Shown here: in pieces, positions 7,691 through 53,745 of the stretch
Layout: each line of letters opens with the position of its first letter
Numbering within the stretch: the stretch's first letter is position 1
NCBI GenBank assembly: GCA_026770705.1
Contig: JANJGN010000210.1
Coordinates: 248,001-312,000, forward strand
Source: Isurus oxyrinchus
Lineage: Eukaryota
Direction: 5' to 3'
DNA length: 64,000 nucleotides
The notes under the pieces: model-generated
The model's input: the letters and a program-made list of their open reading frames with translations, nothing else
What the model was told of the DNA's origin: nothing
Database searches by the model: none
Position numbers and translations under genes: made by a program

Positions 7691-8029
7691 TGTATTCGTA
7701 CAGATGTCTCCATGCTCTGTATCACCGCGCTATGCGTCGACTCAGTGCACAGTAATACATTGCGGAGTCACTCAGTTGTGGTTTGGAGATCATTAACTGG
7801 CTACTTTTCTCGGCCGAATTGATAGAAGCAGAAATTCTCCCCCTGGCAGCGTTTTCTTTCTTCTCCTCTCCTGAAGTGTGTCGCTCAAGCAGGTATTCCT
7901 GTCCTGGAGATTGACAGTACCAGTGTACTGTGTACTGACAGAACCCTGAGTATTCACAGTTTAAAGTAACGGGGTCACCGGCAGCAGAGGCTTGGAAATG
8001 CGGACTCTGGGATACCAGAGAACTGGAAT
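7691..8029 (-). pseudogene. Leaderless NAR-TCR supporting TCR-delta V (inverted cassette, copy A); ORF open, RSS degenerate
   Basis: Acceptor CCCTACAG. DSSSLVSQSP...LNCEYSGFCQYTVHWY...DSAMYYCALSRR with the extra CDR1 Cys. Heptamer CGCGGTG 7723-7729, 23 bp, ACGAATACA; 2-codon FR2 deletion. Confidence 0.85.
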
Positions 8030-10559
8030 CTGTAGGGTCAAAAATAAACATTATTTGTCGGCGTAACCACTGTTTTCCCGGGGGAATTTGTTAATAGCTC
8101 TTGATTTTGCGGTTTCCTTCACTTGGTGCCTGTTCGAACTGTATTCACGGTTATTAAATGTGGTCAAGATGATACATGAGGATGATAATTTATTTTGCAG
8201 AGCAAGTTATTCACATCTGGAATGCACGGTGAAAATGGGTGATAGGAGCAGATTCAACAGTAACTTTCAAAAGGATGATGGATCTGTGCTGGAACAGGGA
8301 TAAATGCATGTCTACGGGGAAAATGTCTGGTTAATGGGGACAATTGGATTGCACTTTTAAAGGGGCAGCCAATGCACAAGTGCCTGAATGTCATCCTTCC
8401 GTGTTGGATGTTTCTGTGATGTATATTAAATTTCTATTTGTATTTTCTTTGGTGAGAGACAAACCCGAAGGAATGTCTTATTATCAATGACGTAATCAAT
8501 TACCAAAAATAGTTAATCGGTAGCGACACAGCTGCGTTGCATCACTGCACACAGCAAGATCCAACAAAAAGCGATGAGCTTAATGATCCGATTGGGCCAA
8601 ACTGATAGTGAACATCAATGGTCAAAGGTCAATTATTTACTGCAGTTTAACACTGCTCTGGAGTTTCAATCTGCCGTTCCTTCCATTTCCCTATTTTCAT
8701 CCATCAACAGGGTCTAACTTATTCCATTTCCATTTAACTTGAAATCTTTACATTCAGTTCCCCTTCATTTTTACATTTCCTTTGTGCTGTTTGCGCTTCT
8801 TACAACCGTGGGAACTTGTCCCAAAGTCTCTCAGTTGTCGGTTTGTTTCAGTCTGTTCAGTTTCCACAGTGGTTTTACTGTTACTTACTGGGAACTGCTT
8901 CTTCCGGCTCTCTGACAATTTAAGTTCTTTCCGCCCATTGACTGATTCTGTCCCGGGTGCTCTGGGCGGAGATTTCACTAGGTTTTACATTGTACAGGAT
9001 CTGCAGAAGATGAAAACGCTATTCGGTCCAACTGAGTAATGGTGAAATGATGATTGCAGCAAGCAATGTTTGACTTCCAGGTCTGGATAATTCAGAGTTT
9101 CCAGTTCCAGTGATAAAACATGAAGCCACACTCAGAGGGACAATGAAATGGGTGTGGACACTGTGTTTGGGACATGGTTTAAAGCTCACATTCACTGCCT
9201 TGGTGAAATCTTGTCATTGTGTATAAACTGCCCTGGATCAAACAACACATTCTGTTGAAATAAGCCTTGCTGCTGGAAACTGAAGGGGAGAAGGACATGT
9301 GGCTGCTGAATAATCCAGGCAGCTAACCAAAGGGCAGAAAATGGCCAAGGAACGACTTCAGGAGCACAGGCCTCACACGGTTTCGGCCGAACGTACATCA
9401 CTCAAACGTGGTCGACCTTTGAGTAGCTCCCGATGAGCTGCCGCTGATCCCCGATGTGCAATCGGAGACATAAACCTCATCTGATTCATCGGAAAAGAAA
9501 AGAAAGATCTACAAAGACCTTTCTGCTTCATACACAAGTTTTGCACGTTAAATATTGTCCAAATTCTTTCCGATTTTGAATACTACTGCCCTGAAACAGC
9601 GCAGAACAGTGCATGACATAAACATGTTTTGCCTCAGATCTACCACAAATACAATTTGTATTTTAAAACACATTTAACCAAATGAGATGTCCCTTCAGCA
9701 GGTAGTGGCAGTGATCTGCGTGCAACATGAATTCTGAGAGGCCGATGTGGCCGATTACACGAGTCATCGTCTGCAATGTGGGAACACTGATACATATTGC
9801 TATCATTATTACTAATACTCAGATTGTGGTAGCTTAAATTTAGGAGACCAAGGTTCTGTAAAAGTAATCGTACGGTGAAGGATTAATTGAATGATTTTCA
9901 ATCAGTATTTGTTTGCAAAACAAGAACATAATTTCTTCTATCAATAGGTTTCATTTTTCTCCTTTACATGTATTTTTATATATTTACATTTAGTTTCATT
10001 TTATTTTTCCATTTCCTTTGTACTGTTTGCACATCTTGCATGGGAAGGTAGCAATCGTGGGAACTTGTCCTAAATTCTTTCAGTTGTCGGTTGGATTCAG
10101 TCTGTTCAGTTTCTGCAGTGGTTTTACAGTTACTTACTGGGAACTGCCTCGTCCGCCCTTCGGACAATTGCAAATTTCTTCCGCCCATTGACTGATTGAC
10201 GGGTTGTCTGATTGGTGTTTTCCCTAAGTTTTACTTTACACAGAATCTGCCTGAAGAGGAATAATCCATTCGGCTCAAATGATTTATCCCTGTGTATTTA
10301 CTGCAGACCAGCCCCCATCTGCCTGAAATCTAATTGTCAAATTCTAGTCAGCTCCCTGTGCCAGTCTGTTCCGTTCTCCCTTCTGTATTTTCAAGTATTC
10401 CCATAATTGTATCAATACTATTTGCTCCAACCACTCCCTGGGCAGCAAGTTCCACATTTTGACCTGCCTGTTTTTACACATCTTCTTCATCGTGTCTTTA
10501 TTTGTTTTGTTTTTGACTATCTTATGTTAATGGCACTAGCTTCACCCACAAATAAACGG

Positions 10560-11270
10560 CTATTCCACAAATACTCCAATGAACCCGTCCATTGCTTAAA
10601 CGATTTCTATGAATTCTCCTCCTATTTCTCTGTTCTCCAGATACAAGAGACCCGGCCTGTTCAACCTCTGCACAAAGAGGTGGATTGTTCCTGATTTCTT
10701 TTCTCAGAGGTGTAACAGATCAAAGCAGTTAATATAACAAACAGAAGCACGAGCGACCATGTTACCTTTCAAAACTTTTCCGCCATTCAGTAATAGCCTG
10801 ACTCATTCTCGATTTCAACATCGCTTTGGCGCAATGTCCCCATATCCGTTGATTCTTTTAGCATCCCAAAATTCATTGAACACTTCCTTTAATACACTCA
10901 ACTACAGGTCTCTGAGGTAGAGAATGTCACAGATTCACAACAATGATTTCACTGAATAACTTTCTCTTCTCATTTCTCATGGCCGTATCCTTACTCTGAA
11001 ACTGTAACCCGTAGTTATGGACTTAACACCCTGGGGAAACACCCACCGAGAATCTATACTGTCCTGGAAGTTAAATGTTCCAATGAAATTACATGTCATT
11101 CCTCTAAACTCTTGGGAACATAGGCCCAGGCTACTCAACCTCCTCTTACAGGACAATCCCTTTATCTCACGAATCAGGCTGATGAACCTTTGTTGCACTA
11201 GCTCCAAGACAAGCAGGTCCTTCCTTAAGTAAAGAGATCATAACTTTACACAACATTCTAAACTGGAGTC
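10560..11270 (-). mobile_element. CR1-type LINE 3' remnants in the J to supporting-V intron (homologous to about 38420-39150 and 51220-51930)
   Basis: ORF 10977-11207 reads ELVQQRFISLIREIKGLSCKRRLSSLGLCS, a CR1 C-terminal pattern. Confidence 0.7.
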
Positions 11271-12168
11271 CATTTCAGTCATTCCTCCATGCACCTCATC
11301 AACTAACATGGGCTCGGATTGTAATTTGAATGGGCCAGAGATCCTCCAATCCTTCTCTCCCTTTCGATTAATTATTTCTTGCTGCTTCTAAATGAACATT
11401 CCCCCAGATTGTAAATGTTTCCCAAGGTCCCTGTTCTCCTTTATAAGATTAATACACAATCCTCAGTCTCTCAGTGCGCTGTGCTGTTTTAATTAACAGT
11501 AATCAGGGACACAGATAAATTACAGCAATCCCATTTCTCAAACATTTACATTCAATATAGAGAAATGTCTGCAATTCCAAACCTGCACATCTGACAGCGG
11601 AAAAGGAGGAAAGTGATTGGTTATATGATGGCAATTGAGAGAAGTGGCGGGGCAATGTCACTAATTTTAGTCACTGGTTGCCCAATCATAAAATTCCATC
11701 TGGACCCACATCAGGGTCTTATATCTGAAGTCCCTTGTGTCACTCTCCCATTTGTCTCCTGGGTCAGGTATTGAACGAGCCGCTGCAGGTATCCGAACTG
11801 GCCATAGTTGTGTTGAGTTTATTCACTCGGTACCTCATTTACATTGCTCAGGTCGGACTGCAATCTGCTGCCCAGTAGAGAGATCTGTGACCTCGCTCCC
11901 GGGCTCTAAGGGACAGACAGAGTGCCCTTGGTCACAGTTAACACCAGGAGTGGAGTCCGGATTGTCGACAATCTGCTTTCATTAAAAACGATTCAGAGTG
12001 TGAGAGTCCGTGATGTTGATGTTGTCCCCGATGTGCCCATTAAACCAATAATGGTCCAGATTCTGTCAACTCCCACATCTCACCCAAACTCCACTGATAT
12101 CAATAATAAACTGTAGGTGAACATTACCCGAGACAGGCTAAAACCCGGCGGGGTTTGGAGTCACTTAC

Positions 12169-12260
12169 CGGCTGTGACAGTCACCACCGTCCCGGATCCA
12201 TCCACATAATCTTATTTTCAGCACAGTGATCCCGCTCTCAGTCTCTCCGGTACAACAATC
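12169..12260 (-). other. NAR-TCR J segment with 23-RSS (inverted cassette, copy A)
   Basis: J 12221-12169 encodes ..DYVDGSGTVVTVTA followed by GTAAGT. Heptamer CACAGTG 12222-12228, 23 bp, ACAACAATC 12252-12260. In-frame TGA/TAA lie in its first 10 nt. Confidence 0.9.
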
Positions 12261-12573
12261 ATTGACACCTCAAACTGCAGGGAAATCATCATCAGACAGT
12301 AGAAACTGCCCAGTTATTGAGCGGATTAAAATAAGTGTAAAATATTCAATGTTTCGAAGCTTCTGTCGGTTCAAACTGTTCTTTGTGAGGCCCTGAGCTC
12401 TGAGTAAATGGCCCCGGGAAGGAGATGTTTGCTTCATATAAACCGAGAAATTATCAAAGAAAGATAACTGAATGGTGGAAATTACAAGAAATATAACCAG
12501 ATAACAGTGATAATAACATCAACCCGACAATTTCCTATCCGGGCCCAGAGAATTTAAACAGTGATCGTACAGA

Positions 12574-13084
12574 GATATTTGCTCCGGTCTGCCCCACTCT
12601 GACTGTACCGCATGCTGTACATATACAGAGCTTTACAGTAATAGGTGGTGGTGTTTCCAACTCTCAGATCCCTAATTTCCAGCGAAAATGTATTTTCTGC
12701 TTTATTCACCGACACAACAAATCTCCCCTCGCTGGAGATCCGCTCCCGGTCTGGGTTTGTCTGAAGAAATCCCCACCCGTCAAAGGACGAGAGAAAAAGC
12801 CACCATAGAAAACGCAGGTGATGGTGAGAGACTGACACTCCTTCCTGGTCACCGCTGCCGGGGTCTGTACCACTGACTGACTGAAAGAGCCTGGAAATTA
12901 AACAGAGAGAGTTTAATGGACCATCAGAGCCGAACCACAGAGCGGGGTCAAAACTCCAGACATTGTCTGGATTTGGGATGGACTCGGGCAGCTTTATATC
13001 AAACAAACACAATGTCGGTTTGTTTGATCGGTACTCACGGGGTAAACGGACACACAGGGTGAAAAGAAAGAGAATTCCAATCGT
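12574..13084 (-). pseudogene. NAR-TCR (IgNAR-like) V pseudogene, germline-fused to the D 3' end and 12-RSS (copy A)
   Basis: Leader 13084-13039 (ATG mutated to ACG, donor GTGAGT). V exon from 12890: SQSVVQTPAAVTRKECQSLTITC...ERISSEGRFVVSVNKAENTFSLEIRDL..TYYCKA, with a 10-bp frameshifting deletion. Followed by CAGAGTG 12601-12595, 12 bp, GCAAATATC. Confidence 0.9.
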
Positions 13085-14423
13085 TCTGCTGCCTGGAGCT
13101 GAGGGTTTATATGACGGGGCGCTGGAGACTGTAGACCCGGACTGCACTGGGAGACCGGACCTCAGAGCTGGACCTAAATATTTAAGTGGGTGCTGAGTTG
13201 ATTTGCACAGGACAGTTCCGCTCTGATCATTGATGGGCCGCACGGTTCCCGGGTCGCTGGCTAAGTCTGTGACTAAGAGACAGGTTTATAAAAGGAGACT
13301 GCAATTTTTTGACTCTTCATTTGGATTGTGATCCGGATGTGAAAAGTCCTCCTGCAATTCTCTGGGGTACAGAGGTGGGGGAGGGGAGCTTTTCTTTCTG
13401 CCAGTTACGCTGCCGCCTTCAAATCCCCGCAATAATGAACTGGGAGGTCGGTGCGTGTGTTTGTATCGGGTGGTTTTTGAGAGATGGCGCTTCCCGTCAG
13501 TCCCTCAGCCTGACCAGTAAAGCCAATGAGTTCGAGGGACTGAACGGTGACCCGGCACTACACCAAGGAGGCAGGAACACCCGGGAGACCTTAATCCAAC
13601 GAACCTTCAGTTAATCCCACACAAATGGGTTTGCAAGCCAGCATTACGTGGCGCATTCATATGCAGCACTTTAGTGCGACATCTGTCACTTCATCAGCTG
13701 CAACAAGGGGCTTTGGACACAAATCTAAATATCCACTCAAACACAAATGACAGGTCTGTGAAACATACAAATGCAGCACAAAGGAGCCACCCTCAGTCAT
13801 AGAAATACATGTGGATTTTATTTTGATCCATCATCTGGTCCAACAAATTTGCCTCATATTTCCTTTCCATTCCCGTGCAGTTTTTCTCTACAGCGCTGTC
13901 CCCATGGCCTCTGATCACGATGGTCTTATTGAATGAGGCAAACAGAAACTACATTTATTGATTGACTTTAAGTCCGATATAAATGCGAAAACTCCAAAGC
14001 AACTTTCACGACGCCTGGAGGTGTTTAGGCGTCAGTGCTTGCTCACCGATTTGTCCTATTCTGTCTTCACTCCCAATTTAACGTATTTATTTCCACGTGT
14101 TTTACTGCGGTGGGAATGTTTACTTCGAGGAGAGATTTACCCAGCAGAGAGACATCAAGGCAAAGGGACAGACAAGCTAAGAAGGTCAGAGCGAGGGAGG
14201 GGGAACCAACCAGTGAATTAAACTATCCGCAGCTCACATTCATTGGTGCGTAGCTGTCATCAGCTCGGACAGACAAGTGAATCTTCTCCTTGGGAAACGC
14301 CCCTCTCTGCCTCAATAAGTGGAGCCCGATCCTGTTTTGGGTTTCACTTTAATATCAGACTAGAGGGACCAACATATTAAGAAGAACCTGTGATTTTTTT
14401 TGTCGAGCTCGAAACCAGATACC

Positions 14424-14892
14424 ATGAGCTCACCATATCCCTTACTGCCAATAATTGCCTTGCTGCCTGGTAAGTCTATGTCTACATAGTCACTGTGTTT
14501 ACGGGGGTTGTATTTCCTCGCCGGCTTTGAACCATTCTTTATATGTGTTACAGAGTCGAATGGCACAGGTTCAATGTCCCAGGATCCGTCTGCATTAATG
14601 ATAATGGAAGGACAATGCATAATACTGGGCTGCAGTTACTCGCCAGCCGGCCCTGTCACAACTCTGTTCTGGTATGTCCAGTATCCCGGGGAAGCTGCGA
14701 GGCATTTACTGAAGCTTGGGGAATGAAGAAAGGCTTCCAAGCTAACCAGACAGATTTTCTGGTTATTTCCACAAAGGAAATATAGCGTCTCCTTTAAATA
14801 TCGCCGGGGAACTTCTCTCCGAAAGCGCCGTGTATTTCTGTGCCCTGGAGCTCACAGTGCTGCGGAGATATTGCCGATCCCGTGCTGAAATC
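14424..14892 (+). pseudogene. TCR Valpha/delta pseudogene with leader and degenerate RSS
   Basis: Leader MSSPYPLLPIIALLP 14424-14469 + GTAAGT. V exon from 14554 SMSQDPS..LGCSY..LFWYVQYPGE, then a stop/frameshift, then SESAVYFCALE. CACAGTG 14853-14859 with a spacer of about 24 bp. Confidence 0.85.
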
Positions 14893-14915
14893 TCACTGAG
14901 AGGTACAGTTAGTGC

Positions 14916-20147: not shown

Positions 20148-21238
20148 ATGTGGCTCTCTCTTAACGCTGTGATCTGGGGGCCATTCATTGGCGGTAAGAG
20201 GATGAAACATTTTTAGAAAGTAACATTAATTTCAGGATGAATCAACGTGAAAAGCAGAGAGTTGGTGTTATCCTTTCAACAGCACGCTGTTCGACCACAT
20301 TTGCAGTTTCACCAAAAGCAAATAGAAGATCAGGAGAAATTTAGGGGAAAAATATTTACCAAGACGAGAACAGAATTGAGAGACAACATCGATGAGGAAT
20401 AATTGGAGATGGTAGGGTTCTTCTCCACAGTTAAGTCAGGACTGAGGGACTAGCTGACAGAGATCCGTAAATAGATGAAAGAGGTTGATAGGGTTGAAAT
20501 GGAAAACTTTCCACATGTCACGGATTATAGAGCTACGGGGCACAAACACAAGAGTGCGAAAAAATATCCAATGGAGTTTTCAGGAGAGGGTTTGCACCCA
20601 CGGAATGGTTAGAATGTTCACTTCACCTTCACAAAGAGGATTTCGGGTGAACAGTGTCCCTGATATAATTGGACAGGTGATGGGAGAATGAAGAGGAGGA
20701 TATGATAGTAGAGTTAATGAGGAGTAATGGAAGGTGATGCTGGCGATTGTAAACACCCGCAGGCACTACTTGCGCCCAATAACCTTTTCTATCGCCCCAA
20801 TGATATCTCCGTCTAAGTAAAACTCTCTGTGAATTATTGCCGTCAGTTCAGTTGAAGTTTTAATCGCTGATTTCCGCTTTCTTTAACCGTGTGTTCCAGA
20901 TCCGAGCAATTGGGATTCTGTTTCTCAGCGGGAATCCTCACTCACACAGACAGAGGGAGAAGGTGTCACTTTCACCTGCACCTATACTGGCACTGGATAT
21001 TACTTATTCTGATACCGTCAGTACCCCGGAAAACAGCCCGAGATTGGAGTCCAGATATACACGGAAGTACAGAATATAAGGTGAATTTCGCTCAGAGCCG
21101 GTTTTCTGATACAACCCAGCAGTCAGACAAGTTGTACCGATTCACCATCCCGGAGCTGTGGCTGTCTGACACCGCGGTCTATTACTGTGCACAGAGTCTC
21201 ACAGTGAAGGGAACGAGTGCAAACCTCGTACAATAAGT
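20148..21238 (+). pseudogene. TCR Valpha/delta pseudogene with leader and 23-RSS
   Basis: Leader MWLSLNAVIWGPFIG 20148-20193 + GTAAGA. V exon 20900-21199: DSVSQRESS..FTCTY..YYLF*YRQYPGKQPE, a frameshift, then LSDTAVYYCAQS. CACAGTG 21200-21206, 23 bp, ACAATAAGT. Confidence 0.9.
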
Positions 21239-26046: not shown

Positions 26047-26514
26047 ATGCGGCTACTCAGCATCTGGGCTGTGTGGACAGCGATTCTGACAGGTAAACGT
26101 GAAGGGAATACACTTCATCTTTTCTCTCTTTTCTCAGGCATGTTTTCAATCAGATTTCAATAAGCTATCGGTCTTAACTTTACTGTTTTAATACATCTTT
26201 TCCAGGCGGGACTCATGGAGATTCTGTCACTCAGCCACTCTCATCAGATGTTAAGACCGAAGGCGAAGAGGTGACTTTGAAATGTAACTATGATACTACA
26301 AGTGACAGCTATGCGTTATACTGGTACCGGCAACACCCAGACACACAGCCCCAGTTTGTACTGTACAAGGATGATTATGGCAGTGAGAATAAAGCAGAAT
26401 TTGCGAAAAGTCGTTTCACTGTAAAGCTCCAGATCTCCACTAAATTCACCAGTTTAACCATCTCGAGTCTGCAGCTGGCTGACGCCGCCGTCTATTACTG
26501 CGCTTTCTGGGACG
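26047..26514 (+). CDS. Intact TCR Valpha/delta segment (leader 26047-26092, V exon 26206-26514)
   Basis: MRLLSIWAVWTAILT/GT..AG/GGTHGDSVTQPLSSDVKTEGEEVTLKCNYDTTSDSYALYWYRQHPDTQPQFVL...LTISSLQLADAAVYYCAFWD. C23, W41 and C104 are present and there are no stops. Confidence 0.95.
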
Positions 26515-26553
26515 CACAGTGATGAAAATCAGTCTCACCCCTGTACAAAAACT
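26515..26553 (+). other. 23-RSS of the intact V
   Basis: CACAGTG, 23 bp, ACAAAAACT. Confidence 0.95.
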
Positions 26554-36242: not shown

Positions 36243-36725
36243 ATGATGGGAATCTTTCTTGTTTTCACCCTGTGTGAATGTTTACCCCGTGAGTACCGAT
36301 CAAACAAACCGACATTGTCTGGATTTAATAGTAAGCTGCCCGAGCCCATCCCAATTACAGACAATGTCTGGGGTTTAACCCCGTTCTGTGAATCTGCTCT
36401 GATGCTCCATTAAACTCTCTCTGTTTAATTTCCAGGCTCTTTCAGTCAGTCAGTGACACAGACCCCGGCAGCGGTTACCAGGAAGGAGTGTCAGTCTCTC
36501 ACCATCACGTGTGTTTTCTATGGTGGTTTTTACGCTCGACATTTGACGGGCGGGGATTTCTTCAGAAAAACCCAGACCGGGACAGAGCGGGAGCGGATCT
36601 CCAGCGGAGGAAGATTTGTTGAGTCGTTGAATAAAGCACAAAATACATTTTCGCTGGAAATTCGGGATGTGAGAGTTGAAGACACCGCCACCTATTTCTG
36701 TAAAGCTCAGTACGAGTACGAAGAA
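36243..36725 (+). CDS. Intact NAR-TCR (IgNAR-like) V segment (leader 36243-36288, V exon 36436-36725)
   Basis: MMGIFLVFTLCECLP/GTGAGT..TTCCAG/SFSQSVTQTPAAVTRKECQSLTITCVFYGGFYARHLTGGDFFRKTQTGTERERISSGGRFVESLNKAQNTFSLEIRDVRVEDTATYFCKAQYEYEE. Shows the VNAR-type missing CDR2 and an extra FR1 Cys; CGTCATATAAA lies about 30 bp upstream. Confidence 0.92.
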
Positions 36726-36763
36726 CACGGCGACGGGTCTCGGTTTCCCGCGATATAAAAACT
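36726..36763 (+). other. Long-spacer RSS of the NAR-TCR V
   Basis: CACGGCG, 22 bp, ATAAAAACT. Confidence 0.75.
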
Positions 36764-37091
36764 CTCACTGCAGATTATTACAGAATCAAATAAAAAAACG
36801 GAGTTAATCTGCAGTGAAACCCCCCACGGCTCCGCCTCACACCGCCTGTCCCACAGTCTAGTGTATAATAAGATTGGATTATTGCCGTTAACATCTTGAG
36901 TTTTATAAATGTCGAGTGTGTGCGGATGGCGATGTCTTTGCCGGGATTGGTGTCAGTGAATGGGGATTGGGAATGACTAATCCCAGTTACAAACCTCTAA
37001 CACCAGATGTGATCCTGGTCTAACAGCTGGAACCGGGAACCGCAGTCCCAGCTGTTTACCTAGTATCCCCACAGCGCACCAAGTACCCAGG

Positions 37092-37164
37092 GGATTTCAT
37101 GCTGACTTGTAACACTGTGTGTTTGGTTGGGGAAGTCACAGTGGAAGAGACTTGAGCAAATATC
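37092..37164 (+). other. NAR-TCR D segment (37120-37136, 17 bp) flanked by two 12-RSSs
   Basis: GGATTTCAT-12-CACTGTG [TGTTTGGTTGGGGAAGT] CACAGTG-12-GCAAATATC. Confidence 0.9.
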
Positions 37165-37480
37165 TCTCCACAATCACAGTATAAATTCTCCAGTCCCGGA
37201 CAGTGAATTGTCGGGTTGATGTTATTGTTGCTATAATCTGGTTACATTTCATTGTAATTTCCACCATTCAGTTATCTTTCTTTAATCATTTTTCTCGGTT
37301 TATATGAAGAGAACATTTCGTTCCCGGGACCATTTACTCAGAGCTCAGGGCCTCACAAAGAACAGTTTGAACAGACAGAGACTTTAAAATATTGAATATT
37401 GTTTATTTATTTATATCCGCTGAATAATTGGGCAGTTTCTACTGTCTGATGATGATTCCCCAGTAGTTTGAGTTGTCGGT

Positions 37481-37563
37481 GGTTGTTGTACCGGGGAAAC
37501 TGAGAGTGGTGTCACTGTGGTGGGTTACTAAATATTATTCTGTGGATGGACCCAGGAAAGCTG
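37481..37563 (+). pseudogene. NAR-TCR J with intact 23-RSS but an internally deleted framework
   Basis: GGTTGTTGT-23-CACTGTG, then WVTKYYSVDGPRKA/GTAATA. It is 15 nt shorter after DG than the paralogous DGSGTVVTVTA J. Confidence 0.8.
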
Positions 37564-40410
37564 GTAATAACTCCAAACCTCGCCGGGTTACCGACTGTCC
37601 CTTGTAATGTTCACCGTCAGTTTATTTTTGATATCGGTTGGGTTTGGGGGGATGTGGGAGTTGACGGAATCTGGACCATTATTGGTTTAACGGGCACATT
37701 GGGGACAACATCAACATCTCGGACTCTCACACTTTGAATCGCTTTTAACGAGAGCAGATTGTCAGCAATCTGGACTCCACTCCCGGTGTTAATTGTGACC
37801 GAGGGAGCTCTGCCTGTCCCTTAGAGCTGGGGAGCGGGGTGACAGATCTCTCTCCTGGGCAGCAGTTTGCAGTCCGAGCTGCGCAATGTGAATGAGGAAC
37901 CAGGTGAATAAACTCAACATAACTGCGGCCAATTCGGATACCTGACTCGGGAGTAAAACAAGCAAGTGACACAATGGACTTCAGATATAAGAGGTGCTGA
38001 TGTGGGTCTACATGGAATTTTATTATTGGATAATCAGTGACTGAAATTAGTGACAATGCCCCCGCCATTTGTTTCAATTGTCTTCAGAAAACCAATTACT
38101 TTCCTGCCTTTCTGACCTCAGACCGAAATGTGAAAGTTTGGAACTGCAGACACTTTATTATCTTGAATGTAGATGTTTGAGAGATGGGATTGCTGTAATT
38201 TTTCTGTATCCCTGATTACTGTTAATGGAAACAACAAAATGCAGTGAGATAGTGAGGATAATGCATTAATCTTATAAAGGAGAGCAAGAACATAGGGAAC
38301 AATTATAAACTGGGGCCATGTTCATTTAGAACCAGCAAGAAATAGCTCAGCGAAAGGGGGAGAAGGATTGTATGACCTCTGGGCGCCTTCCAAAGTACAA
38401 TCCGACCACGTGGTGGGTGAGCTTTATGGAGGGAAGGACTGAAATAGACTGAAATGCTGTGTAAAGTTTTGGTCTCATTACTGAAGAGAGAACCATCTGC
38501 TTTGGAAGGAGTGCAACAAAGTCTCACCAGACTGATTCCTAAGATGAAGAGGTTATCCATTGTGAAATGATTTAGTAGTCTGGGCCTGTATTCCCTAGAG
38601 TTTAGGAGAATGAGAGGTGATCTAATGAAAACATATAATATTCTTCAGGGAACTTGACTGGGCAGATACTGGGTCGCAGTTTCTCCAGGCTGAGGAGTAT
38701 AGAACTCAGGGTCACAGCTTCAGAAGAAAGGGTCATCCATTAGAACTGAGAAACGGAAAATAATCTTGAGAAGAACTATTGTTGCGAACCTGTGGCATTC
38801 TGTAACTCAGAGAGCGATGGGTGTTCAGTATCACCGTGTATGCAAGGCAATATTCGACAGATTTTTGGATACTAACAGAATCAGGGGATATTGGGAGAAT
38901 GCGGGAATGTGATGTTGAGGTGGAAAATCAGCAACCATATTACTGAATGGCTGAGCAGGTTTGAAAGGTGATCAGGCGCCTCCTGCTTCTATTCGATTCT
39001 CTACTTTGATTTCCTATAGGCCTGAGAAAAGAAATCAGCAGCATTCCACATCTCTCTGGGAAGTTGAAGCCGGCAGGGCCTCTTTTTTCTGGACAAAAGG
39101 GAAACACTGGGAAAATTAATAGAAACCTTTCAAACAATGAGCGGTTTTAGTCTGGTGAAATTGTTTATTTGTGGCTGAGGCCAAAGCAATGGACCATCAA
39201 AATATTAACAGGACAAAGAAGAATATTAAGACAAATAAATTTTAACAAAGACAAGTCAGAGTATGGAACTTGCTGTCCCAGGGAGTGCTTGCAGATATTA
39301 CTGATATATTTACGGAACAGACCGACCCAGGGAGCTGGATGGAAATGGTCAGTTAAGTTTCGGTGGGGATTAGGTTGGAATTGAGTCTATGCACAGGTTG
39401 AATGGCCCATTCCTCTTTTGCGTTCTTTTTCCTCCATAATGTTAAAATTGAGGGAAAACTCCGCCCAGTGAACCCGGGAAAGAATCAGTTAACATACGGA
39501 AAGAATTGAAATTGTTAGAGAGCCGGAAGAGGCAGTTCCCAGTGAGTAACAGTAAAACCACTGCGGAAACTGAACAGACTGAACCCAACAGACAACTGAG
39601 AGAGTTTGGGAGAAGTTCCCACGATTGCAAAAAGCGCAAACAGCACAAAGTAAATGTGAAAAAAGGAAATGTGAAATAAAGTAAATAAAATTAAATTAAT
39701 TGTAAATATTTCAAATGAACTGAACTGCAGAAGATTGGACCCTATTGATAAAACTTAGAGAAATAGAGCACCAGGCCGAGAGAAATTCCTGAGCACTTAT
39801 AAGCCGCAGGAAATGATTGACCTTTGGCCACTGATGTTTGGCTTTGGCCCAATTGGTGCTGATGATTCCCATCAGTTTGTGTTGGGTCTTGTTGTGATGT
39901 CACACAGCTGTATTTCTCTCCAACAAACATTTTTTTTTTGGAAATCGGTTGCCTCATTGATCATAAAATATTCCCTCGGGTTTGTCTCTCACTAGGGATA
40001 ATACACACAGGGATGTAATTTTATTCATAGAATTATGCGGCCCATCATGTAGGCGCCGACGCTTTAGAAGTGCAAACCAATTGTTCCTACGGCCCATTAA
40101 CTTTCTCCATCGCTCTATATTTTTATTTACATTTCCAGTACAGATCCATTACCTGCTTCAAAGTTACAATGGAATCTGTTCCCACCACCAATTCAAACGG
40201 TGCATTCTTCATGAGGAGAATTCGCTATGGAAAAAAAAAATCACTTCATTCCCTACTTTATCATATTTTAATAACAGTGAATACGGTTCAAACAGGCTTC
40301 AAACGAATAAAATTAACACAAAAAGCAGAGCTATTCAAGCGATCGACAATTTCTCCTGGACAAACAGTGGATAAACAAAAAGATAATGTTCATTTTTTTT
40401 GATTCTCCAG

Positions 40411-40755
40411 ATTCCAGTTCCATGATTTCCCGGGATCCGCCAGTACAAACCTCTGCTGCCTGTGACACCATTACTTTAAACTGTGAATATTCAGGGTTCT
40501 GTCCGTACACAGTACACTGGTATCGTCTGTCGCCCGGACAGGCTCCGGAATATGTGCTTCAGAGACACACTTCAGGAGAGGAGAATAAAGAAAACGCCGT
40601 CGAGGGGAGAATTTCTGCTTCTATCGAATCCGTCGAGAAAATCAGCCGGTTAAAGATCTCCAAACTACAATGGAGCAACTCCGCTTTGTCTTACTGTGCA
40701 CAGAGTCGGCGTGCAGCACAGTGATACAGAGCATGGAGAGAGCTGTAGAAAAGCC
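40411..40755 (+). CDS. Leaderless NAR-TCR supporting TCR-delta V with 23-RSS (ORF open, functionality uncertain)
   Basis: Acceptor TTCTCCAG. DSSSMISRDPP..TLNCEYSGFCPYTVHWYRLSPGQAPEYVL...WSNSALSYCAQSRRAA with the CDR1 Cys; DxAxYYC is altered to NSALSYC. CACAGTG 40717-40723, 23 bp, AGAAAAGCC. Confidence 0.85.
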
Positions 40756-48337: not shown

Positions 48338-48676
48338 TGTATTTGTACAGATGTCTCCATGCTCTGTATCACCACGCTATGCGTCGACTCAGTGCACAGT
48401 AATACACAGCGGAGTCGCTCAGTTGTGGTTTGGAGATCTTTAACTGGCTACTTTTCTCGGCCGAATTGATAGAAGCAGAAATTCTTCCCCTGGCAGCGTT
48501 TTCTTTCTTCTCCTCTCCTGAAGTGTGTCGCTCAAGCAGGTATTCCTGTCCTGGAGATTGACAGTACCAGTGTACTGTGTACTGACAGAACCCTGAGTAT
48601 TCACAGTTTAAAGTAACGGGGTCACCGGCAGCAGAGGCTTGGAAATGCGGACTCTGGGATACCAGAGAACTGGAAT
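48338..48676 (-). pseudogene. Supporting TCR-delta V, inverted cassette copy B
   Basis: ORF 48369-48698; the heptamer is further decayed to CGTGGTG. Confidence 0.85.
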
Positions 48677-52829: not shown

Positions 52830-52921
52830 CGGCTGTGGCAGTCACCACCGTCCCGGATCCATCCACATAATCTTATTTTCACCACATTGACCCCGCTCTC
52901 AGTCTCTCCGGTACAACAATC
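52830..52921 (-). other. NAR-TCR J with 23-RSS, copy B
   Basis: DYVDGSGTVVTATA/GTAAGT; heptamer CACATTG 52883-52889, 23 bp, ACAACAATC. Confidence 0.88.
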
Positions 52922-53234
52922 ATTGACACCTCAAACTGCAGGGAAATCATCATCAGACAGTAGAAACTGCCCAGTTATTGAGCGGATTAAAATAAGTGTA
53001 AAATATTCAATGTTTCAAAGCTTCTGTCGGTTCAAACTGTTCTTTGTGAGGCCCTGAGCTCTGAGTAAATGGCCCCGGGAAGGAGATGTTTGCTTCATAT
53101 AAACCGAGAAATTATCAAAGAAAGATAACTGAATGGTGGAAATTACAAGAAATATAACCAGATTACAGTGATAATAACATCAACCCGACAATTTCCTATC
53201 CGGGCCCAGAGAATTTAAACAGTGATCGTACAGA

Positions 53235-53745
53235 GATATTTGCTCCGGTCTGCCCCACTCTGACTGTACCGCATGCTGTACATATACAGAGCTTTACAGT
53301 AATAGGTGGTGGTGTTTCCAACTCTCAGATCCCTAATTTCCAGCGAAAATGTATTTTCTGCTTTATTCACCGACACAACAAATCTCCCCTCGCTGGAGAT
53401 CCGCTCCCGGTCTGGGTTTGTCTGAAGAAATCCCCGCCCGTCAAAGTACGAGAGAAAAAGCCACCATAGAAAACGCAGGTGATGGTGAGAGACTGACACT
53501 CCTTCCTGGTCACCGCTGCCGGGGTCTGTACCACTGACTGACTGAAAGAGCCTGGAAATTAAACAGAGAGCGTTTAATGGACCATCAGAGCCGAACCACA
53601 GAGCGGGGTCGAAACCCCGGACATTGTCTGGAATTGGGATGGACTCGGGCAGCTTTATATTAAACAAACACAGTGTCGGTTTGTTTGATCGGTACTTACG
53701 GGGTAAACGGACACACAGGGTGAAAAGAAAGAGAATTCCAATCGT
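53235..53745 (-). pseudogene. Germline V-D-fused NAR-TCR V pseudogene, copy B
   Basis: Same junction, 10-bp deletion and lost ATG as copy A. Leader 53745-53700, exon 53551-53263, 12-RSS 53262-53235. Confidence 0.9.

What the first reader, a model, noticed from the sequence alone, without database searches (positions are those of the whole stretch)
12604..12621. 18-bp fold-back palindrome at the V-D junction: possible fossil P-nucleotides
Seen: the coding strand reads TGTACAGCA|TGCGGTACA (8 of 9 pairs complementary), then only GT before the D 3' heptamer; the split D ends in ...AGT. The symmetry centre is 16 nt after TGT AAA GCT, close to where the split V ends (18 nt). It is identical at 53265-53282. 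Known: P-nucleotides arise from off-centre opening of RAG-made hairpin coding ends, and unusually long P tracts are typical when Artemis/DNA-PKcs hairpin opening is impaired. Inference: a hairpin intermediate was opened about 9 nt off-centre with almost the whole D lost. This favours RAG over random deletion and hints at atypical end processing in germ cells.
Basis: partly seen in the sequence, partly recalled or inferred. Interest (0 to 1): 0.8.

Follow-up and report, generated by a model that had tools for sequence, protein, structure and literature searches.

The report
Palindrome at fossil shark V-D joint
An 18-base mirror-image sequence sits exactly where the V and D pieces of a now-dead shark T-cell-receptor gene were fused in inherited DNA; it may be a rare footprint of the hairpin step of antigen-receptor cut-and-paste, but one case cannot exclude coincidence.

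Summary
On the minus strand, 12621-12604 reads TGTACAGCA|TGCGGTACA (8 of 9 pairs), followed by GT and the D 3' signal. The same letters occur at 53282-53265. That copy is not independent, because it lies in a 40.7-kb tandem duplication.

The setting is a germline V-D-joined NAR-type TCR cassette. It is dead in both copies: the start codon reads ACG, there is a 10-nt frameshift, and two heptamers lack CAC. A contig from another organism's run spans the joint, so it is neither an assembly artefact nor a somatic rearrangement.

Three of 7 unjoined relatives have 16-nt V tails, and two end Tyr-Ser plus one base before the heptamer. That places a full-length V end on the symmetry axis. None of the three D-type sequences I could see carries the right arm.

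A hairpin-derived P tract of 8-9 nt is therefore my best reading, at about 0.5. Chance gives 1e-4 to 3e-3. Such long P tracts are equally rare. The parental V and D were not found, and the palindrome is partly built from self-complementary hexamers. "Atypical germ-cell processing" rests on one junction.

The scan has noted germline-joined NAR-TCR exons elsewhere in this genome. It has no note of a P-type palindrome.

The parts
12613..12621 (-). Left arm of the palindrome (TGTACAGCA); the last 9 bases of the presumed full-length V coding tail
   Evidence: GTAC and the final CA match V tails of relatives. The layout Cys-Lys-Ala-x-Tyr-x-Tyr-Ser plus 1 base matches unjoined P0005.
12604..12612 (-). 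Right arm (TGCGGTACA); a candidate P tract, 8 of 9 bases being the inverse complement of the left arm
   Evidence: None of its 8-mers (TGCGGTAC, GCGGTACA) occurs anywhere else in the window; GGTACAGT, which spans the last six arm bases plus the GT remnant, occurs once more, at 14902.
12602..12603 (-). GT, the remnant of the D 3' end. With A at 12604 it reads AGT, as at the end of the split D.
   Evidence: A paralogous contig (X1 record 6) stays alignable only up to 12604.
12574..12601 (-). Retained D 3' recombination signal: heptamer CAGAGTG (no CAC), 12-nt spacer, nonamer GCAAATATC
   Evidence: 22 of 28 bases are identical to the split D 3' RSS at 37137-37164. See also the alignment.
12602..12890 (-). 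Fused V-D exon of the NAR-type V. It carries a 10-nt deletion near 12744-12749 that shifts the frame into a stop.
   Evidence: It is 90.8% identical to the split V up to the GCT codon. Paralogous contigs carry the 10 extra bases (records 7, 13, 14).
13039..13084 (-). Leader exon whose start codon reads ACG in both copies (ATG in the split cassette)
12169..12260 (-). Unjoined J with its 23-spacer signal: nonamer 12260-12252, heptamer CACTGTG 12228-12222, J coding 12221-12169
7723..8030 (-). Downstream supporting V (V-set, open frame). Its heptamer reads CGCGGTG (7729-7723), so it has no CAC.
   Evidence: (V-set E 1.5e-13).
53265..53282 (-). The same palindrome in tandem copy B
   Evidence: The duplication is shown.
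36436..36732 (+). Comparison: split NAR-type V exon with an 18-nt tail, plus its heptamer CACGGCG (22-nt spacer)
   Evidence: Best solved-structure matches are shark VNAR domains, E 7e-19.
37113..37143 (+). Comparison: split D (37120-37136, 17 nt) between two 12-spacer signals

Best explanation
The palindrome marks a fossil coding joint. In a germ-line cell of an ancestor, the V and D of one NAR-type TCR-delta cassette were joined by a RAG-type deletion. That deletion removed the V signal, the intervening DNA and the D 5' signal.

My reading of the joint has three steps:
1. The V coding end was left full length, ending ...TGTACAGCA.
2. Its sealed hairpin was nicked about 8-9 bases from the tip. 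The flipped-out strand therefore added the inverse complement (TGCTGTACA, now TGCGGTACA after one change).
3. This end was ligated to a D cut back to its last 2-3 bases.

The cassette later died and was duplicated in tandem.

Shown: the joint itself, its germ-line status, the pseudogene state and the palindrome. Inferred: that the V end was untrimmed, that the right arm is a P tract rather than D sequence, and the order of events.
For: 1. RSS-bounded deletion. Both flanks align to the split cassette, and only the V RSS, the spacer DNA, the D 5' RSS and most of the D are absent. The signal spacers (V 22/23, D 12 and 12, J 23) allow V-to-D joining.
2. Germ-line status. The joint is identical in two tandem copies that differ by 2.8%. 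A 246-nt contig from another organism's run spans 12458-12703 with 4 other letters and no gaps (X6 record 21).
3. The axis coincides with a full-length V end. Unjoined relatives have tails of 16 nt in 3 of 7 cases, 18 nt in 3 of 7 and 10 nt in 1 of 7. P0005 ends C-K-A-W-Y-E-Y-S and then reads T-Q-stop into the heptamer. P0002 ends Y-S then T-Q-stop. The joined V reads C-K-A-L-Y-M-Y-S.
4. A contig from a third organism follows the V as far as ...AGCAT. It then continues with D-core-like TGGTT and a heptamer-like CACAGAG (X7 loose end at 12612). The same V end can therefore be joined to plainly D-derived sequence without the palindrome arm.
5. The right arm fits the P model at 8 of 9 bases. It fits the split D at only 5 of 11 (p = 0.11).
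6. Chance p is 1e-4 to 3e-3.
7. There is no spacer at the axis, as a hairpin origin requires.
8. The pattern of a full-length flank, a long P tract and a deletion of more than 8 nt in the partner is what Rooney et al. 2003 report for Artemis-deficient cells. They found P in 35 of 60 joins, 1-7 nt long (passages).
9. Lee et al. 2000 found little sign of TdT additions in germline-joined shark genes (passages). That argues against 8 untemplated bases.
Against: - The parental V and D were not found.
- The V-tail support from other sharks is at protein level, so the Ser codon and the last base are inferred.
- Four of 7 relatives do not have 16-nt tails. The only split V in the window has an 18-nt tail and matches 0 of the last 6 bases.
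- Normal P tracts are 1-2 nt, so the prior for 8-9 nt is about as small as the chance probability.
- TGTACA and GCATGC are each self-complementary. The outer arms are therefore also a direct repeat of GTACAG, and part of the symmetry is cheap.
- Palindromes of this strength are common in the window: 11, against 7.3 expected.
- DNA around the D is very diverged between cassettes (spacer 7 of 12). The last 8 bases match the split D at 5 of 8, so a divergent D origin remains possible.
- I saw no contig across the palindrome in runs X1 and X2. In X1 the depth there equals that of one paralogous contig that ends at 12604. The tool warns that such a hole proves nothing.
- This is a single junction.
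Confidence: 0.5

Rival explanations
1. Coincidence with an ordinary joint. The V-D joint is real and RAG-type. The right arm is mostly germline D sequence from an unseen, divergent or shorter D of the parental cassette, or filler, with at most an ordinary 0-3-nt P (TGC). The 18-nt symmetry arises because both sides happen to contain GTACA.
For: - Palindromes with at least 8 of 9 pairs occur 11 times in 64 kb.
- TGTACA and GCATGC are self-complementary, and GTACAG occurs twice as a direct repeat.
- The last 8 bases match the split D 3' part at 5 of 8. This is similar to the 7 of 12 identity of the neighbouring RSS spacer.
- The split D also starts with TG, so two central pairs come free if V ends in CA.
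- V tails vary between 10, 16 and 18 nt.
- P tracts normally do not exceed 2 nt.
Against: - Even with the two central pairs given for free, at least 6 of the remaining 7 pairs needs p of about 1.3e-3 (my own calculation). The simulated range is 1e-4 to 3e-3.
- The 11-mer matches the split D no better than random: 5 of 11, p = 0.11.
- The two other D-type sequences seen lack GCGGTAC. These are organism C's junction and X1 record 6.
Confidence: 0.38
2. The inverted copy was templated by fold-back (snap-back) synthesis, or by another alternative end-joining process, at a break that was not a RAG hairpin. An example is a random deletion whose 3' end primed on itself.
For: Junctional inverted duplications are known products of alternative end joining (recalled, not checked here). 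The D-side end point lies 14-15 nt inside the D and not at a signal border.
Against: - Fold-back priming needs an unpaired loop. Here the six central bases pair without any spacer.
- The V-side end point falls on a family-typical coding end.
- Both signals that a V-to-D join must remove are gone, and the two it must keep are kept.
- Contigs of paralogs with differently joined V-D and V-D-J forms exist in the same runs (joints 12542>12624 and 12202>12624). Repeated RAG-type joining is therefore the simpler account.
Confidence: 0.08
3. Artefact: an assembly error, or a somatic T-cell rearrangement captured in the assembly.
For: No contig of runs X1 or X2 was seen across the palindrome itself.
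Against: - Two tandem copies that differ by 2.8% overall share the joint.
- A contig from another organism's run spans it with 4 differences in 246 bases.
- The gene carries several old lesions shared by both copies.
Confidence: 0.02

Closest known systems
Germline-joined NS4 light-chain genes of the nurse shark (Lee, Fitch, Flajnik, Hsu 2000, PMC2193156; abstract and passages read)
   Same: Inherited fusion of V-type segments with complete loss of the signals. The coding ends show small losses. The authors read possible P bases at the V end as evidence for a hairpin intermediate and RAG activity in germ cells, and found little sign of TdT.
   Different: There the proposed P region is 2 bases, in V-J joints of expressed light-chain genes. 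Here the tract would be 8-9 bases, at a V-D joint of a NAR-type TCR-delta cassette that is only partly joined (J still split) and is dead.
Coding joints of Artemis- or DNA-PKcs-deficient cells (Rooney et al. 2003, PMC2193825; passages read). The scid papers of Kienker 1991 and Schuler 1991 were seen only in its reference list.
   Same: Full-length coding flank, long P tract, and a deletion of more than 8 nt on the partner end.
   Different: Those are experimental or somatic joints in mutant cells, with typical P of 1-7 nt (mean 3.6). This is a single fossil joint in a wild genome. Nothing here shows that the cell lacked Artemis.
Doubly rearranging NAR-TCR of sharks (Criscitiello, Saltis, Flajnik 2006). 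The paper is not held and is known to me only from citing passages.
   Same: A NAR-type V with its own D and J, upstream of a second V of the delta type.
   Different: As described in the citing passages, both V domains are assembled by somatic rearrangement. Here V and D are already fused in the germ line and the cassette cannot rearrange or be translated.
Partially germline-joined VH in a marsupial (Wang and Miller 2012). Seen only as a title in reference lists.
   Same: A partly pre-joined V in inherited DNA.
   Different: I did not read it, so I make no comparison of junction structure.

Membership tests
P-nucleotide tract at a V(D)J coding joint | Lies at a joint between two signal-bounded coding segments, with the signals excised | tested here: met
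   The V RSS, the intervening DNA and the D 5' RSS are absent. The flanks align to the split cassette on both sides.
P-nucleotide tract at a V(D)J coding joint | Symmetry axis falls on the last base of an untrimmed germline coding end | tested here: inconclusive
   The axis is 16 nt after GCT. Three of 7 unjoined relatives have 16-nt tails, and P0005 and P0002 end Tyr-Ser plus 1 base before the heptamer. The parental V was not found, and 4 of 7 relatives have other tail lengths.
P-nucleotide tract at a V(D)J coding joint | Added bases are the inverse complement of that end, with no spacer | tested here: met
   8 of 9 bases fit, and the central 6 bases pair perfectly.
P-nucleotide tract at a V(D)J coding joint | Added bases are not encoded by the partner segment | tested here: inconclusive
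   Zero of 3 D-type sequences seen carries them. The split D matches at 5 of 11, p = 0.11. The other two are organism C's junction and X1 record 6. The parental D is unknown.
P-nucleotide tract at a V(D)J coding joint | Usual length of 1-2 bases | tested here: not met
   The tract is 8-9 bases. This length class is reported for cells defective in hairpin opening.
Germline-joined (partly joined) antigen-receptor gene of cartilaginous fish | Segments fused without signals between them, with the remaining signals kept | tested here: met
   V and D are fused. The D 3' 12-RSS and the J 23-RSS are present.
Germline-joined (partly joined) antigen-receptor gene of cartilaginous fish | Inherited, not somatic | tested here: met
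   It is shared by two diverged tandem copies and by a contig of another organism's run.
NAR-TCR cassette | NAR-type V domain | tested here: met
   The split paralog's best solved-structure matches are shark VNAR domains, E 7e-19. The joined V is 90.8% identical to it. The joined V's C-terminal piece scores 25.8 bits for V-set, just under the 26-bit cut-off.
NAR-TCR cassette | Own D and J, followed on the same strand by a leaderless supporting V-delta | tested here: inconclusive
   D remnant and J are present. A V-set open frame lies 4.1 kb downstream, at 7725-8051, and is preceded by an AG acceptor. I did not test for the absence of a leader or for delta identity.
NAR-TCR cassette | Expressed as a three-domain delta chain | not tested
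   No listed run is on record as RNA. This copy cannot be translated.

The most novel reading that the evidence does not exclude
RAG cut this locus in a shark germ-line or early embryonic cell where normal Artemis:DNA-PKcs hairpin opening was not available. The hairpin was therefore opened far from its tip. If so, the many germline-joined receptor genes of this genome would together carry a scid-like signature: full-length ends, long P tracts and large partner deletions. That signature would be a readable record of DNA-end processing in shark germ cells.
Probability: 0.12. Interest if true: 0.7.

Novelty: new member of a known kind. Interest (0 to 1): 0.4.

Why it matters
Germline-joined antigen-receptor genes of sharks are the main evidence that RAG has acted outside lymphocytes. 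The published junction evidence for a hairpin intermediate that I could read rests on possible 2-base P regions (Lee et al. 2000, passages). An 8-of-9 palindrome anchored on a full-length V end would be a much clearer single footprint of that intermediate, and it lies at a TCR locus.

My searches for germline-joined NAR-TCR genes returned 7, 3 and 2 papers. I read passages of three of these papers (PMC5931798, PMC12227049 and PMC7615758) and saw the rest only as listings; none of what I saw describes such a gene.

If long P tracts recur at other germline joints, they would say something about end processing in germ cells. As it stands this is one junction in a dead gene, so its value is as a lead for a genome-wide survey.

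Tried and rejected
**Functional DNA hairpin: rejected.** As single-stranded DNA, the 35 nt around the palindrome fold at -4.1 kcal/mol with z = -1.12. Twenty-six of 200 shuffles fold at least as well.

**Right arm copied from nearby sequence: no support.** Its 8-mers occur nowhere else in the window, except GGTACAGT (the last six arm bases plus the GT remnant) at 14902, in the flank of an unrelated V signal. One 7-mer is the reverse complement of bases at the J nonamer/spacer border. That 7-mer occurs six times in the window, which is about what chance gives.

**Assembly artefact or somatic rearrangement: rejected**.

**The split V of this window as the parent: rejected.** It is 9% diverged, and its tail matches 8 of the first 12 bases and 0 of the last 6.

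**Attempts to obtain DNA of relatives failed.**
- Two metagenome scans found no relative.
- The three word searches returned only 5 relatives in all. These were 4 of 5 candidates, no candidate and 5 of 7 candidates.

**Not run.** I did not run the large representative protein search. Its 50% clustering would also collapse this V family.

**Papers and supplements.** Criscitiello 2006 and Ott 2021 are not held. Supplements are closed. The source data on N/P bases in PMC5931798, and any locus tables of PMC12227049, could bear on normal shark P lengths and on annotated NAR-TCR segments. I did not see them.

Full report
**What is there**

The finding lies on the minus strand. After the conserved Cys codon (12637-12635) the coding sequence reads AAA GCT CTG TAT ATG TAC AGC ATG CGG TAC AGT. 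It then runs into CAGAGTG (12601-12595), a 12-nt spacer and the nonamer GCAAATATC (12582-12574). The 18 bases 12621-12604 form TGTACAGCA|TGCGGTACA, with 8 of 9 positions complementary and the axis 16 nt after GCT. The same 18-mer occurs at 53282-53265 and nowhere else in the window.

**Setting**

The window holds a tandem duplication of about 40.7 kb with 489 mismatches in 17,687 aligned bases, or 2.8%. The two palindromes belong to the two copies and are therefore one event.

Each copy carries a minus-strand cassette made of these parts:
- a leader exon;
- a V exon fused to a D remnant;
- the D 3' signal;
- a split J with a 23-spacer signal;
- a second V-set open frame 4.1 kb further on.

A split cassette of the same family lies on the plus strand:
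- V exon at 36436-36725, with heptamer CACGGCG and a 22-nt spacer;
- D at 37120-37136, between two 12-spacer signals;
- J signal with a 23-nt spacer.

The split V's best solved-structure matches are shark VNAR domains, E 7e-19. It hits Pfam V-set. Together with the downstream V, this is the architecture that papers describe as NAR-TCR. I know that architecture from citing passages only, because the original paper is not held.

**The joint is a RAG-type germ-line joint**

I aligned both joined copies with the split cassette. The joined form lacks exactly four things:
- the V signal;
- the 387 bases between the V and D signals;
- the D 5' signal;
- most of the 17-nt D.

Homology resumes at AGT plus the D 3' signal, where 22 of 28 bases are identical. 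It continues through the D-J interval at 85.9% identity. The 22/23, 12, 12 and 23 spacer layout permits V-to-D joining.

The joint is inherited. It is identical in two copies that differ by 2.8% overall. A 246-nt contig from a run labelled as another organism spans 12458-12703 with 4 other letters and no gap (X6 record 21). I could not see which 4 letters differ.

In runs X1 and X2 I saw no contig across the palindrome. The X1 depth in bin 12593-12621 (28.6) equals what one paralogous contig ending at 12604 would give. The tool warns that such a hole proves nothing.

**The cassette is dead**

Both copies share these lesions:
- The leader start reads ACG where the split cassette has ATG.
- A 10-nt deletion near 12744-12749 shifts the frame into a stop. 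Paralogous contigs carry the 10 bases.
- The D 3' heptamer lacks the CAC.
- The heptamer of the downstream V reads CGCGGTG in copy A and CGTGGTG in copy B, although that V's frame is open.

"Fossil" is therefore the right word.

**Is the axis at the V end?**

Two metagenome scans found nothing. The indirect evidence is as follows.

I have seven unjoined relatives:
- Tails of 18 nt: the split V of the window, P0001 and P0004.
- Tails of 16 nt: P0003, P0005 and a paralog seen as the X6 loose end at 12624, which reads ...TACTGGTAGTACA before CACAGTG.
- Tail of 10 nt: P0002.

For the five proteins, tail length is inferred from how the frame reads into the heptamer: T-Q-stop, A-Q-stop or H-G/H-S.

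P0005 is a bamboo-shark model. It ends C-K-A-W-Y-E-Y-S and then T-Q-stop. The joined V reads C-K-A-L-Y-M-Y-S and then the right arm. P0002 also ends Y-S then T-Q-stop. A V tail ending Tyr-Ser plus one base, 16 nt after the Ala codon, is thus a natural coding end in this family, and it falls on the axis.

One contig of a third organism follows the V up to ...AGCAT. It then reads TGGTTAAT, CACAGAG and a 12-nt spacer that is 9 of 12 identical to the split D signal (X7 loose end at 12612). That is the same V end joined to plainly D-derived sequence. Only 30 letters of one contig were shown, and I do not know how far it covers the V side.

Against this: 4 of 7 tails are not 16 nt, the codons of P0005 and P0002 are unknown, and the window's own split V matches 8 of the first 12 tail bases but 0 of the last 6.

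**Is the right arm D sequence?**

The 11 bases between the axis and the heptamer match the split D at 5 of 11 when anchored at the 3' end (p = 0.11). Other offsets do no better. Organism C's junction lacks GCGGTAC. The paralogous D-bearing contig X1 record 6 stops aligning at 12604, so it shares no more than the terminal AGT.

So 0 of 3 D-type sequences supports a D origin, but the parental D is unknown. DNA around the D is very diverged between cassettes (spacer 7 of 12). The last 8 bases match the split D at 5 of 8. A divergent D therefore cannot be excluded.

**Chance**

Palindromes with at least 8 of 9 pairs are common. The window has 11 (9 independent), against 7.3 +/- 2.5 expected. Only the position counts. 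Simulation gives 1e-4 for an axis fixed at the V end, 4e-4 for +/-2 nt, and 2-3e-3 for any axis in the junction zone.

Part of the symmetry is cheap. TGTACA and GCATGC are each self-complementary, and the outer arms are equally a direct repeat of GTACAG.

On the other side, P tracts normally measure 1-2 nt. Even Artemis-deficient ES cells gave typically 1-7 nt (mean 3.6). In those cells 35 of 60 joins had P tracts, full-length flanks were enriched, and deletions of more than 8 nt occurred in 30% of joins against 2% in wild type (Rooney et al. 2003, passages).

The rate of true 8-9-nt P tracts and the rate of chance palindromes per junction are thus of similar small size. I put the hairpin reading at about 0.5, coincidence with an ordinary joint at about 0.38, other templated synthesis at about 0.08, and artefact at about 0.02.

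Several points favour the hairpin:
- the axis has no spacer;
- the V end is full length;
- the D lost 14-15 nt;
- Lee et al. 2000 saw little TdT-type addition in germline-joined shark genes and had already read 2-base palindromes as hairpin evidence (passages).

**Comparison with what is known**

Germline joining by a RAG-like process, with possible P bases, is published for shark light chains. This case is a further member of that kind, at a new locus and only partly joined. The tract would be unusually long.

My searches for germline-joined NAR-TCR genes returned 7, 3 and 2 papers. I read passages of three of these papers (PMC5931798, PMC12227049 and PMC7615758) and saw the rest only as listings; none of what I saw describes one.

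Earlier notes of this scan report many germline-joined NAR-TCR V-D-J exons on other pieces of this genome. No note holds the words for a P-type palindrome. One search also shows contigs of paralogs with other joined forms:
- a second V-D-joined form, with 79 other letters replacing 12543-12623, in X1 and X2;
- a form that skips 12203-12623, that is from V to J, in X1.

**Verdict**

The RAG-type germ-line joint is well supported. The long P tract is plausible and has passed the two tests that could be run indirectly, but it is unproven. The inference about germ-cell end processing rests on one junction.

Noticed in passing
window 37520-37565 (+), compared with 12221-12169 (-): The J of the only split cassette in the window lacks 15-16 nt of the FR4-coding part that the joined cassette's J has. 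Before the splice donor it reads D-G-P-R-K-A instead of D-G-S-G-T-V-V-T-V-T-A. The cassette with an intact V therefore has a doubtful J, and the cassette with a dead V has a good J.
   Followed up: partly
window 12231-12785, compared with 52892-53446: The tandem copies differ by 2.8% overall. They differ at only 2 columns in 12267-12766 (mean 16 per 500 columns), while the J region 12111-12230 has 13 differences. A second patch of low divergence lies at 13367-13866. This suggests patchy gene conversion between the copies.
   Followed up: partly
window 7723-7729 and the matching place in copy B (about 48370-48376): The heptamer of the supporting V of the joined cassette has lost its CAC: CGCGGTG in copy A and CGTGGTG in copy B, against CACAGTG in the split cassettes at 152 and 40717. 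Its 109-codon frame is still open in both copies.
   Followed up: yes
window 7700-13100 (-), compared with 14600-14860, 20889-21206, 26050-26521 and 36243-40723 (+): The dead joined cassette lies in the opposite orientation to the split cassette and to three neighbouring V segments with 23-spacer signals.
   Followed up: no
window 12100-12950, runs X1, X2, X6, X7: Summed contig word depth is in the hundreds to tens of thousands on the V exon and the D-J interval, but collapses over 12564-12621. Small runs (14 and 142 million letters) still hold 15-27% of the sampled words. Parts of this cassette therefore appear to be in very high copy number in these genomes.
   Followed up: no
   Followed up: no
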